From the NCBI GenBank assembly GCA_053919585.1, contig CM132794.1: 64,000 bases of DNA; one strand, 5' to 3'. Of the stretch, positions 8,781 through 12,473 are shown one piece after another; position 1 is the stretch's first letter; each line of letters starts with the position of its first letter. This DNA comes from Euprymna scolopes. Its lineage: Eukaryota. The position numbers and the translations under genes are program-made. The notes below the pieces were generated by a model. The model was not told where the DNA came from, did not search any database, and saw only the letters and a program-made list of their open reading frames with translations.

Positions 8781-8821
<41 letters not shown>

Positions 8822-8841
8822 ATTTATAAAATATATATGGC

Positions 8842-8904
8842 CGACTAAGCTACACTGAATATTCTGCGTTTCATCCACTGTAGGATTCGTCAGGCTTATG
8901 CGCG
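8842..8904 (-). ncRNA. Type I hammerhead ribozyme in the PLE pseudo-LTR (left arm)
   Basis: Minus strand reads UAAGC-CUGACGA-AUCC(uacagu)GGAU-GAAA-CGCA GAAUAUUC AGU-GUA/GCUUA. Core intact, stems I-III can pair, stem III loop palindromic; predicted cleavage between 8851 and 8850. Confidence 0.88.
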
Positions 8905-8924
8905 AATTTTGTGGTTGCTTCTTG

Positions 8925-9000
8925 TTTTTATATATGTTGAGGATTTCTAGTTAGCCAATCAGCTTTCTAGTATCCACCGCGCCCCCTCCTATCAGCCAAT
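8925..9000 (-). promoter_or_regulatory. Putative Pol II promoter of the PLE pLTR (left arm), facing left
   Basis: CCAAT at 8996-9000 and 8955-8959, GC box at ~8977-8986, and TATATAAAAA on the minus strand at ~8925-8934, about 30 nt before the hammerhead. Confidence 0.55.
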
Positions 9001-9730
9001 GGGCATGCATTTTATCGAACAAAGGATCTGTTTTAGAACTAGGTTAGTGGTTTAAGGTAGATCTTTTCCCTCCTTTTTTTTTTAATATATATATGAATAT
9101 ACCTATGTGTACACACACATGCATACACATATACATATATATATACATATATGTGTGATCGTTTATGTATATTCATGTTTAATTTATTTATTTGTTTGTT
9201 TTCTATTGTTATTGTTAGTTTTAAAGCTATTTTGTATCGCTATCCTAGAGTGGGTTTTATTTTGTGAACACAGTTGTTTGCTATTTCTCGTCTACAGTTT
9301 AATAGATTTTGAGGTTCTTTAAAGTACAGGATAGCAAATTTTTCATGGAGGCGTAATTTACATGGGTCGTCTAAGTGTCTGCATGTGGTAACTTGTCTCA
9401 TTATTTTCCATTCGACTACCGGCGAATGTCCGCTTTCTTTGAGTTCCCAGAATTTATTCGCTAGTGTTGTTTTTATACGGTGTTTTTTTTTTTATCTTTG
9501 AAGGTACTTTTGTGGTCATAGTATCGGGTTTTAAAATCTAAGGAAGTCATGCTTATGTAATATTTCTTGTTATTCGGGTTTTCTTTCGCAAATATTGTTG
9601 CTTGATAAACTACACTTTTTGTTAAGCATTTATTTTGGATTGGGCAAATTGTGCGGTGTCTACAATTGCATTTATCTTGTTCGTTATTATTATTATTATT
9701 TATGGTATGGTTGTTCTTGTCCGGGGTTGG

Positions 9731-9808
<78 letters not shown>

Positions 9809-10540
9809 TCTGCTAGTGTTGGTTTTATTTCTGTCATGGTGTCTACTTTTTTATTGTTTATTTTGTTGTTGTTCACATTGTTTTCATTTAGTATTTTGTC
9901 ATTATGTGCTTTAATTATCATCTCTAAATTTTCGCAACAACTGTAAAGTAACTTCAAGGTATTTTTATTGAAGATTTTGTGTAAGGGGTTGGTTGCGGGA
10001 AAGTGTTTTTGAATAAGATCTAGGAATTTCTTGCCAAGTTTTGTTTTTAACATTTGATTGTATGGGGCCGTATACCAAATTATAGTTCTTTTTCTTCTAT
10101 TTTTAATTTTATTATAGTTGTTGGTGTTTTGTTGCTTATATTTGATATCGATATTTTTTTATCCACTATTTTTTAGGGCTGTTTCGTAGATATTGGTTGA
10201 CCTGTTAAATGCATTTTCATCGCTTGAGTTATTACTGAGTCTACTTACGATCGAGTTAGGAATGTGTTTTATAATTGATGGTGGGTGGTTGGACTTAGGG
10301 TTTACGTAAATTGGAGTAGCGTTATCTTTTAAGTATGGTTCATATGTGTTTTTATCTAAGTTTAACGTGACGTCCAGGAAGTTTGTTATTTTTATGTTAG
10401 CTGATACGTCCGCTTTTAGGCCTAATTTTTTCATTTCTTTGTGTAAGATTTTCTTAAAGTTTTCTCCCTTGACTTTGTTGGAGTTTTTTATTATAGCTAG
10501 TCCGTCATCTCCATATAGGCCGATATCCGTAGTATCGAAT

Positions 10541-11395
10541 AACAATAACCAATGGATAAAAACTAAAATGAAAAATTCGTTCGATTTGGCGATGGGTGCC
10601 AGAGACTCTGCAGAGGCATCAGATCTTGTGGGATTATTCATTCTATATACCCTCACAAACATATTCGATACTACGGATATCGGCCTATATAGAGATGACG
10701 GACTAGCTATAATAAAAAACTCCAACAAAGTCAAGGGAGAAAACTTTAAGAAAATCTTACACAAAGAAATGAAAAAATTAGGCCTAAAAGCGGACGTATC
10801 AGCTAACATAAAAATAACAAACTTCCTGGACGTCACGTTAAACTTAGATAAAAACACATATGAACCATACTTAAAAGATAACGCTACTCCAATTTACGTA
10901 AACCCTAAGTCCAACCACCCACCATCAATTATAAAACACATTCCTAACTCGATCGTAAGTAGACTCAGTAATAACTCAAGCGACGAAAATGCATTTAACA
11001 GGTCATCCAATATCTACGAAACAGCCCTAAAAAATAGTGGATAAAAAAATATCGATATCAAATATAAGCAACAAAACACCAACAACTATAATAAAAGTAA
11101 AAATAGAAGAAAAAGAACTATAATTTGGTATACGGCCCCATACAATCAAATGTTAAAAACAAAACTTGGCAAGAAATTTCTAGATCTTATTCAAAAACAC
11201 TTTCCCGCAACCAACCCCTTACACAAAATCTTCAATAAAAATACCTTGAAGTTACTTTACAGTTGTTGCGAAAATTTAGAGATGATAATTAAAGCACATA
11301 ATGACAAAATACTAAATGAAAACAATGTAAACAACAACAAAATAAACAATAAAAAAAGTAGACACCATGACAGAAATAAAACCAACACTAGCAGA

Positions 11396-11464
<69 letters not shown>

Positions 11465-11952
11465 CCAACCCCGGACAAGAAAAACCATACCATAAATAAT
11501 AATAATAATAATGAACAAGATAAATGCAATTGTAGACACCGCACAATTTGCCCAGTCCAAAATAAATGCCTAACAAAAAGTGTAGTTTATCAAGCAACAA
11601 TATTTGCGAAAGAAAACCCGAATAACAAGAAATATTACATAGGCATGACTTCCTTAGATTTTAAAACCCGATACTATGACCACAAAAGTACCTTAAAAAA
11701 TAAAAAAAACACCGTATAAAAACAACACTAGCGAATAAATTCTGGGAACTCAAAGAAAGCGGACATTCGCCGGTAGTCGAATGGAAAATAATGAGACAAG
11801 CTACCACATGCAGACACTTAGACGACCCATGTAAATTACGCCTCCATGAAAAATTTGCTATCCTGTACTTTAAAGAACCTCAAAATCTATTAAACTGTAG
11901 ACGAGAAATAGCAAACAACTGTGTTCACAAAATAAAACCCACTCTAGGATAG
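10541..11952 (+). pseudogene. PLE RT / GIY-YIG endonuclease polyprotein, C-terminal half
   Basis: ORFs 10346-11044 and 11150-11719 share one frame, separated by TAA at 11042-11044; a frameshift in an A-run near 11700 leads to KHRIKTTLANKFWELK...CKLRLHEK...LLNCRREIANNCVHKIKPTLG* ending at 11952. Confidence 0.88.
11396..11458 (+). repeat. (AAT)21 in-frame poly-Asn in the RT-EN linker; (ATT)24 counterpart at 9737-9808
   Basis: Direct count of the triplets. Confidence 0.93.
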
Positions 11953-12190
11953 CGATACAAAATAGCTTTAAAACTAACAATAACAATAGAAAACAAACAA
12001 ATAAATAAATTAAACATGAATATACATAAACGATCGCACATATATGTATATATATGTATATGTATATGCATGTGTGTGTGTACACATAGGTATATTCATA
12101 TATATATTAAAAAAAAAGGAGGAAAAAGATCTACCTTAAACCACTAACCTAGTTCTAAAACAGATCCTTTGTTCAATAAAATGCATGCCC

Positions 12191-12266
12191 ATTGGCTGAT
12201 AGGAGGGGGCGCGGTGGATACTAGAAAGCTGATTGGCTAACTAGAAATCCTCAACATATATAAAAA
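12191..12266 (+). promoter_or_regulatory. Putative Pol II promoter of the PLE pLTR (right arm), facing right
   Basis: ATTGG at 12191-12195, GGGGGCGCGG at 12205-12214, ATTGG at 12232-12236 and TATATAAAAA at 12257-12266. Confidence 0.55.
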
Positions 12267-12286
12267 CAAGAAGCAACCACAAAATT

Positions 12287-12350
12287 CGCGCATAAGCCTG
12301 ACGAATCCTACAGTGGATGAAACGCAGAGTATTCAGTGTAGCTTAGTCGC
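12287..12350 (+). ncRNA. Type I hammerhead ribozyme in the PLE pseudo-LTR (right arm)
   Basis: UAAGC (12293-97), CUGACGA (12298-304), stem II AUCC/GGAU, GAAA (12319-22), stem III ACGC/GUGU, GUA (12338-40), then GCUUA pairing with UAAGC; predicted cleavage after 12340. Confidence 0.88.
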
Positions 12351-12473
12351 CATATATATTTTATAAATTACTAACTAGCTCTACCTACGTATTGAGCACT
12401 TTAAGTAAATACTTAAAGTTTACGCATAAATCTATACTTTCGTATATTAAATTTATGTGAGTAAATGAAGTAG

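What the first reader, a model, noticed from the sequence alone, without database searches (positions are those of the whole stretch)
8817..12373. 3.55-kb Penelope-like palindrome with an outward-facing promoter and hammerhead ribozyme at each end
Seen: arms 8817-10541 and 10662-12373 (~1.72 kb each) are reverse complements around a 120-bp spacer that is simply extra RT coding sequence of the right copy. Both arms carry RT C-terminus, GIY-YIG, 3' UTR and hammerhead, and the unit sits between (TA)n tracts. Established: PLEs form partial tandems, sometimes inverted, and carry hammerheads in their pLTRs. Inference: this is one insertion made by fold-back or template switching, and the inverted part is long enough to include coding sequence. 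It looks like a TIR element with ribozyme termini. A read-through transcript from either side would fold into a ~1.7-kb dsRNA hairpin trimmed at its 3' side by the ribozyme, a possible endogenous siRNA source against the family.
Basis: partly seen in the sequence, partly recalled or inferred. Interest (0 to 1): 0.8.

Follow-up and report, generated by a model that had tools for sequence, protein, structure and literature searches.

The report
Head-to-head pair of dead Penelope-like retrotransposons
Two broken, front-truncated copies of one Penelope-like jumping gene (Hydra clade) sit nose to nose in a TA-repeat of a mollusc genome, each with a hammerhead ribozyme motif at its outer end; this is the usual insertion scar of these elements, not a new kind of element.

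Summary
Arms 8817-10541 and 10662-12373 are reverse complements, differing by 19 substitutions and 8 small indels. The 120-nt spacer is extra RT coding sequence of the right copy.

Both arms encode the RT C-terminus, a CxCX5C linker and a GIY-YIG nuclease. Each carries a complete type I hammerhead motif 33 nt from its outer end.

Protein motifs, size of relatives, (TA)n target and hammerhead match the Hydra clade of Penelope-like elements (Craig et al. 2021). A model of the closest full-length relative matches telomerase RT best, and its nuclease domain matches I-TevI.

The arms are sister copies. At 10 positions, including an in-frame stop, both share a state that 83-100% of the family's contig depth lacks. 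They join at a 4-nt microhomology, so one insertion event is well supported.

Priming on both cut target strands explains the structure at least as well as fold-back.

Inverted 5'-truncated copies, one-sided tails, (TA)n targeting and siRNAs from inverted Penelope copies are all published. This scan has also noted the same head-to-head scar elsewhere in this genome.

The promoter is motif-level only. siRNA production and read support for the central joint could not be tested.

It is an ordinary, tidy example.

The parts
8781..8818 (.). Left (TA)n target microsatellite, directly abutting the left arm
   Evidence: Sequence read. The same tract also borders a Tc1-like element on its left.
8817..10541 (-). 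Left arm: 5'-truncated Hydra-clade PLE copy (RT C-terminus, linker, GIY-YIG, 3' UTR, hammerhead), with no tail
   Evidence: Inverted repeat. tblastn of the right copy's protein pieces hits it at 91-100%.
8846..8898 (-). Left hammerhead motif. Its loop 3 holds the 8-nt palindrome GAAUAUUC, which is the family's majority state. The predicted cut lies between 8851 and 8850 on the minus strand.
   Evidence: Descriptor hit. Family majority at the equivalent right-arm position 12329.
8928..9000 (-). Left promoter-like block (CCAAT 8996 and 8955, GC box 8980, TATA 8928-8934 on the minus strand), facing outward
   Evidence: Motif positions only.
10538..10541 (.). Head-to-head joint with a 4-nt microhomology (AATA) shared by the 5' ends of both copies
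   Evidence: Left-arm homology ends at 10541. Other family copies diverge from the window upstream of 10538 and continue with proper RT coding sequence (loose ends; frame checked).
10542..10661 (+). Spacer: 120 nt of RT coding sequence (around motif B) present only in the longer right copy
10538..12373 (+). Right copy: 5'-truncated Hydra-clade PLE, starting at about residue 303 of a roughly 720-aa ORF
   Evidence: phmmer: 54% identity to P0001 residues 303-470. Collinear alignment.
10544..11044 (+). RT remnant (motif B, GLYRDDG motif C, thumb) ending in an in-frame stop at 11042-11044 that both arms share
   Evidence: Other family copies read a sense codon there.
11045..11716 (+). Linker and N-terminal half of the endonuclease: (AAT)n poly-Asn expansion at 11396-11463, CxCX5C at 11525-11551, GIY..YIG strands; the frame breaks near 11695-11720
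11719..11952 (+). C-terminal half of the GIY-YIG endonuclease in another frame (conserved E and N, CxH; the CxxC motif is degraded)
   Evidence: The fold of the closest intact relative matches I-TevI with Z 8.8.
12191..12263 (+). Right promoter-like block: ATTGG 12191, GGGGCG 12206, ATTGG 12232, TATATAA 12257. This puts a predicted start about 12285-12295, facing outward.
   Evidence: Motif positions only. A TSS and promoter inside the pLTR are published for Penelope (PMC8557442).
12293..12345 (+). Right hammerhead motif: helix I 12293-97/12341-45, CUGACGA 12298-12304, helix II 12305-18, GAAA 12319-22, helix III 12322-39, predicted cut after 12340. A private G at 12329 breaks the loop palindrome.
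12374..12475 (+). Candidate PLE 'tail' or extension, present on the right side only; its length is unresolved
   Evidence: The 12304-12457 bin has the highest depth in all four runs. Many contigs run on through 12402, while others end at 12373 followed by (TA)n.
12476..12531 (.). Right (TA)n target microsatellite

Best explanation
One retrotransposition event put a Hydra-clade Penelope-like element into a (TA)n microsatellite as two 5'-truncated copies lying head to head.

Proposed steps (inferred unless marked):
1. The element's GIY-YIG nuclease cut both strands of the target.
2. Each free 3' end primed reverse transcription near the 3' end of RNA from the same, already defective, source copy. 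One start was at the short site (12371-12373 type, left arm). The other was at a site further downstream, giving the right-side tail.
3. Both cDNAs stopped early, at about residues 303 and 343 of the ORF.
4. Their 3' ends annealed through the 4-nt AATA microhomology, and each served as template to complete the other strand.

Since then the arms have diverged by about 1.1% in substitutions, plus slippage indels.

Shown here: the anatomy, the family assignment, the sister relationship of the arms, the microhomology, and 3' ends shared with other copies. Inferred: priming on both strands, and the order of events.

The copy cannot encode its protein. Each outer end keeps a promoter-like block and a hammerhead motif that point into the flanks, as any PLE terminal repeat would.
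For: - Inverted arms and spacer.
- RT piece: 5239 relatives, and the full-length ones are about 720 aa.
- Collinear alignment with RT motifs, CxCX5C, GIY..YIG, and CxxC/CxH around the conserved E and N. This equals the published Hydra-clade diagnosis (PMC8557442 section 11).
- The model of P0001 matches TERT first. The nuclease model matches I-TevI at Z 8.8, T4 EndoII at 7.4 and UvrC at 6.2, with unrelated folds at Z 3 or less.
- Hammerhead descriptor: 2 hits against 0 in shuffles.
- Ten positions, including the stop codon, where both arms share a state that 83-100% of the X1 family contig depth lacks (over 90% at nine of them); for the five listed with their own depths the window's allele has nil to about 17% of the depth.
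- Family copies continue 5' of 10538 with correct RT coding sequence, which leaves a 4-nt overlap at the joint.
- Other copies end at 12373 followed by (TA)n.
- Literature: inverted 5'-truncated copies, a tail at one end and a (TA)n bias are typical of PLEs. PAc cleaves and extends both strands and starts RT at two adjacent sites.
Against: - No read or contig could be shown to cross the 10541/10542 joint. None of the 3 sampled joint words was listed in any run. The runs appear to be well under 1x for a genome that earlier scan notes put at 5.9 Gb, so this is uninformative rather than negative.
- Topology and microhomology fit a cDNA fold-back equally well.
- The 102 nt at 12374-12475 are longer than the published 30-40-bp tail, and their status rests on coarse depth bins only.
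- Arm-to-arm gene conversion could also produce shared private states.
- Rfam models do not recognise the hammerhead, and its 10.1-11.1 pair is A-U rather than the usual G-C.
Confidence: 0.6

Rival explanations
1. One insertion, made by fold-back. A single cDNA (the right copy) stopped at 10538. Its 3' end snapped back onto its own AATA at 10662-10665 and copied itself outward, giving the left arm; the 120-nt spacer was the hairpin loop.
For: The spacer belongs to one copy only. The 4-nt microhomology has the right polarity for snap-back. The arms share private states.
Against: The left arm stops at the canonical short 3' end and lacks the right-side extension, whereas a copy of the right cDNA should carry it if 12374-12475 is a true tail. 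No published PLE data for snap-back were found. Extension on both strands is documented.
Confidence: 0.2
2. Assembly or sequencing fold-back artefact. Only one truncated copy exists, and the second arm was created by chimeric palindromic reads or misassembly of a very high-copy repeat.
For: The family is extremely abundant: about 24,000 contigs were laid in one run. PLE tandem/inverted structures are known to trouble assemblies. No run was listed for the joint words. Runs of N lie nearby.
Against: Both arms end at the element's own 3' terminus with unlike flanks, not mirrored flanks. The arms differ by 19 substitutions, 14 of them transitions, unlike read-error noise. The joint has a clean microhomology. 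The architecture is the expected biological one.
Confidence: 0.08
3. Two independent insertions of the same family in opposite orientation into one (TA)n tract, which happen to abut.
For: The family targets (TA)n and is very abundant. A Tc1-like element and another inverted pair use the same tract.
Against: No (TA)n is left between the two 5' ends. The arms share 10 states that are absent or rare among the laid family contigs, including a stop codon.
Confidence: 0.05
4. The palindrome is a working hairpin-RNA locus. A read-through transcript folds into a roughly 1.7-kb dsRNA, the sense hammerhead trims its 3' side, and Dicer products silence the family.
For: The arms are about 98% complementary. 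siRNAs mapping to inverted regions of rearranged Penelope copies are published for transformed D. melanogaster. RNA-labelled runs hold family words.
Against: No locus-specific transcript was found, no small-RNA data could be laid, and RNA-run depth tracks DNA copy number. The element's own promoter-like blocks point outward, not through the arms. Nothing suggests selection: the arms are decaying.
Confidence: 0.07

Closest known systems
Hydra clade of Penelope-like elements (Craig et al. 2021, PMC8557442)
   Same: [quoted passage not shown] The clade is reported from molluscs among other phyla.
   Different: This copy lacks the N-terminal half, so RWK and DKT cannot be seen in it. Its linker holds an (AAT)n expansion. 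No tree against reference Hydra sequences was made.
[quoted passage not shown]
   Same: 5' truncation, an inverted partner copy, an extension at one end only, and a microsatellite target.
   Different: There is no full-length copy and no direct pLTR here, only the two truncated copies joined 5' to 5'. The candidate tail is about 100 nt rather than 30-40.
PAc (Poseidon of Anolis carolinensis) in vitro retrotransposition (PMC11167929)
   Same: Offers the mechanism: cleavage and extension of both target strands, and two adjacent internal RT start sites that explain tails.
   Different: It belongs to a different clade (Penelope/Poseidon), its target was its own ORF-pLTR junction, and head-to-head products were not described.
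Rearranged Penelope copies with long inverted repeats that yield siRNAs in transformed D. melanogaster (Evgen'ev 2013, PMC3681739)
   Same: Inverted PLE coding sequence as a potential dsRNA source.
   Different: There the siRNAs were measured. Here nothing beyond the sequence is known.
L1 twin-priming inversions (Ostertag and Kazazian 2001; from my own knowledge, not checked here)
   Same: Both strands of the target prime cDNA, and the two cDNAs join at a microhomology.
   Different: In L1 the second primer anneals inside the same RNA, giving an inverted 5' part and a direct 3' part. Here both arms start at the element's 3' end.
Head-to-head hammerhead elements in (TA)n noted elsewhere in this genome by this scan (s1-295499 and others)
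   Same: Same scar, same target, same genome.
   Different: Those are short non-coding elements. This pair still carries recognisable RT and endonuclease coding sequence.

Membership tests
Penelope-like elements | Reverse transcriptase closest to telomerase RT | tested here: met
   The window's RT piece is 54% identical to P0001 residues 303-470. The P0001 model (pLDDT 84.6) matches TERT structures first, ahead of DRT, retron, group II, L1 and R2 RTs. Pfam RVT_1 is only sub-threshold.
Penelope-like elements | GIY-YIG endonuclease fused to the RT | tested here: met
   The window pieces align with the GIY..YIG, R, H, E and N columns. The model of the closest intact relative (pLDDT 91.9) matches I-TevI Z 8.8, EndoII 7.4 and UvrC 6.2. 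Pfam GIY-YIG is only E 0.016-0.033.
Penelope-like elements | Hammerhead ribozyme motif in the terminal repeat | tested here: met
   Complete core and three helices at both outer ends; 2 hits in the window against 0 in 100 shuffles. Family variants listed in the motif fall in loops. Rfam is negative. Self-cleavage was not tested.
Penelope-like elements | 5' truncation with tandem or inverted partner copies | tested here: met
   Published as typical.
Penelope-like elements | Optional tail extension at one end | tested here: inconclusive
   12374-12475 is high-copy and contiguous with the 3' end in many contigs, while others stop at 12373. Its end could not be mapped, and it is longer than published tails.
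Hydra clade of PLEs | CxCX5C linker motif | tested here: met
   CNCRHRTIC at 11525-11551. C1, C3 and C9 are invariant in 26 relatives.
Hydra clade of PLEs | No CCHH in the endonuclease; CxxC and CxH flank the conserved E and N | tested here: met
   Invariant columns are C102, C105, E108, N123, C132 and H134, with no CCHH. In the window, CxH is present and the second Cys of CxxC is replaced.
Hydra clade of PLEs | N-terminal RWK motif, and DKG changed to DKT | not testable with these tools
   The window copies are truncated. Both motifs are present in the nearest full-length relative P0001, and partly in the others.
Hydra clade of PLEs | Short element (<3 kb) that inserts into (TA)n | tested here: met
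   Relatives have roughly 720-aa ORFs on 2.6-3.0-kb contigs. There is (TA)n on both sides here, and behind 12373 in other copies.
Hydra clade of PLEs | Groups with reference Hydra RTs in a tree | not tested
   No reference Hydra, Neptune, Penelope or Naiad sequences could be fetched by the tools.
Hairpin-RNA / endo-siRNA locus | A single transcript across both arms, and 21-23-nt small RNAs of both polarities from the arms | not testable with these tools
   Only contigs of high-copy family sequence could be laid. There was no small-RNA access.
Class II TIR transposon | Terminal inverted repeats flanking a transposase or its deletion derivative | tested here: not met
   The arms are retroelement coding sequence, and there is no transposase between them.

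The most novel reading that the evidence does not exclude
The locus is a transcribed hairpin gene. Read-through RNA folds into a roughly 1.7-kb duplex whose 3' side is trimmed by the sense hammerhead, and this feeds siRNAs against a very abundant Hydra-clade PLE family in a mollusc.
Probability: 0.07. Interest if true: 0.45.

Novelty: new member of a known kind. Interest (0 to 1): 0.2.

Why it matters
It matters little beyond annotation. The locus is a clean natural record of how these elements insert: both arms start at canonical 3' ends, a tail sits on one side only, and the 5'-5' joint has a 4-nt microhomology. A genome-wide census of such pairs in this very PLE-rich genome could discriminate two-strand priming from fold-back, a step of PLE transposition that is still undefined. 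The family also extends the little-studied Hydra clade to a high-copy family in a mollusc.

Tried and rejected
- Rfam at gathering and at E<=10 gave no hammerhead. The only hits were sub-threshold miRNA models on TG/TA low-complexity sequence at 9080-9150 and 12030-12110, rejected as compositional.
- Pfam on the window's protein fragments gave nothing useful. NCBIfam on relatives gave nothing.
- An HMM search of the PDB with the full-length profile gave no hit. With the endonuclease profile, I-TevI came top but at E 0.21.
- MFE folding of single hammerheads does not give the ribozyme fold: -9.5 against -15.8 and -17.6 kcal/mol, with unremarkable z-scores. Cofolding two right-arm copies does give the dimeric form.
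- Metagenome contigs of distant relatives (L001-L004) showed no hammerhead, by my descriptor or by Rfam.
- A search for runs holding the joint words listed none.
- The many short 'skip' joints between 8864-8903 and 12256-12348 have sides under 31 nt, so I did not interpret them.
- I made no consensus and no repaired reading of the element.
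Full report
**Observation.** The inverted repeat is real. Repeat finding returns collinear inverted blocks covering 8842-10541 and 10662-12349 at 97-99% complementarity, with 120 nt between the inner ends. A gapped alignment carries identity out to 8817 and 12373. 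BLAST finds only these two copies in the window. The arms differ by 19 substitutions, 14 of them transitions. They also differ by 8 indels, all in homopolymers or microsatellites. The last two bases of each arm are TA and cannot be separated from the target repeat.

**Coding content.** The spacer and right arm read as one interrupted frame.
- 10544-11041 is RT, from motif B through GLYRDDG to the thumb. An in-frame stop follows at 11042-11044.
- 11045-11716 is a linker with an (AAT)n poly-Asn run, a CxCX5C motif at 11525-11551, and the GIY and YIG strands.
- The frame breaks near 11700.
- 11719-11949 carries the rest of the nuclease.
- The left arm shares the stop and the frame break.

Pfam sees nothing in these fragments.

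**Family.** A full-library phmmer search with the RT piece finds 5239 relatives. The intact ones are about 720 aa, and the best, P0001, is 54% identical over its residues 303-470.

These relatives carry RWK and DKT (or DKS/DKN) near the N-terminus, FDxxxFYPSI, GLYRDDG, CxCX5C, GIY..YIG, CxxC before the conserved E, and CxH after the conserved N. They have no CCHH. That is the published diagnosis of the Hydra clade of Penelope-like elements. The same paper reports short elements, canonical hammerheads, near-universal insertion into (TA)n, and hosts that include molluscs (PMC8557442).

Two fold tests back the domain calls:
- The nuclease model of the closest intact relative (pLDDT 91.9) matches I-TevI (Z 8.8 over 93 of 94 residues), T4 EndoII (7.4) and UvrC (6.2). 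Unrelated folds score 3 or less.
- The full-length P0001 model (pLDDT 84.6) matches telomerase RTs first. That is the defining affinity of PLE RTs.

I made no tree against reference clades.

**Hammerheads.** On the sense strand of each arm, 33 nt from the outer end, lies a type I motif:
- helix I, 5 bp;
- CUGACGA;
- helix II, AUCC/GGAU;
- GAAA;
- helix III, four pairs closed by a loop;
- U-A, then the cut site (after 12340 in the right arm).

My descriptor hits only these two places in 64 kb, and never in 100 shuffles.

The left arm's loop 3 holds the palindrome GAAUAUUC. The right arm has a private G at 12329, and the family majority has the palindromic state. A palindromic helix III/loop 3 and action as dimers are the published traits of PLE hammerheads (PMC4209133). 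Cofolding two right-arm copies gives the dimeric form.

Caveats: Rfam finds nothing. The 10.1-11.1 pair is A-U rather than the usual G-C. The monomer ribozyme fold is not the MFE. Cleavage is untested.

Both arms run past the predicted cut site. The RNA that templated them was therefore uncut there, as reported for PAc.

**Promoter.** Upstream of each hammerhead, on the sense strand, are two inverted CCAAT boxes, a GC box and TATATAA (right arm 12191-12263). These would place a start about 12285-12295, pointing outward. A promoter and TSS inside the terminal repeat are published for Penelope. Here this is motif evidence only.

**Family context from public runs.** Runs labelled as one organism and as mollusc metagenomes hold the stretch. 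Laying contigs of four runs shows an extremely abundant family: about 24,000 contigs in one DNA run. Depth rises toward the 3' end, as expected for 5'-truncating retroelements. Three further results follow.
- Other copies diverge from the window upstream of 10538 and continue with sequence that translates into the expected RT residues. The right copy is therefore truncated at 10538-10541. The left-arm homology ends at 10541, which leaves a 4-nt AATA overlap at the joint.
- Some copies end at 12373 followed by (TA)n. Many others run on through 12374-12457, the highest-depth bin in all four runs. So 12374-12475 is probably a one-sided tail, and the insertion unit spans 8817-12475 between (TA)n tracts.
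- At ten positions both arms share a state that 83-100% of the X1 family depth lacks (over 90% at nine of them). One of these is the stop codon, where other copies read a sense codon.

The third result makes the arms sister copies.

**Mechanism.** A single event is the economical reading:
- no (TA)n is left between the 5' ends;
- the joint is a microhomology;
- the two arms share private states.

Fold-back of one cDNA and priming on both target strands give the same topology. I favour two-strand priming for three reasons. A PLE protein cleaves and extends both strands and uses two adjacent RT start sites in vitro (PMC11167929). Both arms begin at canonical 3' ends. The tail is on one side only, which a copy of the other arm's cDNA would not predict. 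This step is inferred.

**Artefact?** I could not obtain read support for the joint. Only the one read-laying run returned high-copy contigs. None of the three sampled words across the joint was listed in any run. The runs appear to be well under 1x of a genome that earlier scan notes put at 5.9 Gb, so this says only that the joint is not itself a high-copy sequence.

Against an artefact:
- the arms end at the element's own terminus, with unlike flanks;
- the differences between the arms are transition-rich;
- the architecture is the expected one.

**What is known.** The following are all published:
- an inverted 5'-truncated copy beside a PLE, one-sided tails, microsatellite targeting, and the trouble such structures cause assemblers (PMC8557442);
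- dsRNA and siRNAs from inverted Penelope copies (PMC3681739).

Notes of this scan report the same head-to-head scar in (TA)n for many short hammerhead elements of this genome. I treat those notes as leads only.

**Verdict.** This is a dead, tidy example of a known kind. The siRNA idea remains untested.

Noticed in passing
window 7148-8780: Tc1/mariner-type DNA transposon with an intact 337-aa transposase ORF (7370-8383, minus strand; Pfam HTH_Tnp_Tc3_2, HTH_SB, DDE_3). Its roughly 210-nt terminal inverted repeats are 99% alike and begin CAGTG. It sits in the same (CA)n(TA)n tract as the PLE pair and may be young.
   Followed up: partly
window 11396-11463 and 9732-9808: An (AAT)n microsatellite has grown inside the PLE linker coding region, giving a poly-Asn run that relatives lack. 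The two arms differ there by 9 nt.
   Followed up: partly
window 12532-13128 and 21352-21958: A second inverted pair (90-94% alike, about 8.2 kb apart) starts at the same right-hand (TA)n. My strict descriptor found no hammerhead in it.
   Followed up: partly
window 9080-9150 and 12030-12110: A TG/TA-rich stretch in the 3' UTR gives sub-threshold Rfam hits to mir-297, mir-3149 and mir-1277 on both strands. I judged these compositional.
   Followed up: yes
window 13904-14155: A minus-strand ORF whose end (…WSGHLVRMDD…) looks like the C-terminus of a LINE reverse transcriptase. It lies just beyond an N run at 13323-13495.
   Followed up: no
L001 (marine metagenome contig, 6320 nt): An intact 718-aa relative (49% identical in the RT piece) is followed by tandem repeats of about 650-750 bp. 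The contig's first and last 127 nt are identical, which suggests a tandem or circular assembly.
   Followed up: no
runs X19 and X20: Two very small RNA libraries (3 million letters each) of another organism label hold a third of the sampled words of the stretch. Contigs reach up to 1.4 kb; a 1,274-nt one lies on the Tc1-like flank. The repeats are abundant in those libraries.
   Followed up: partly
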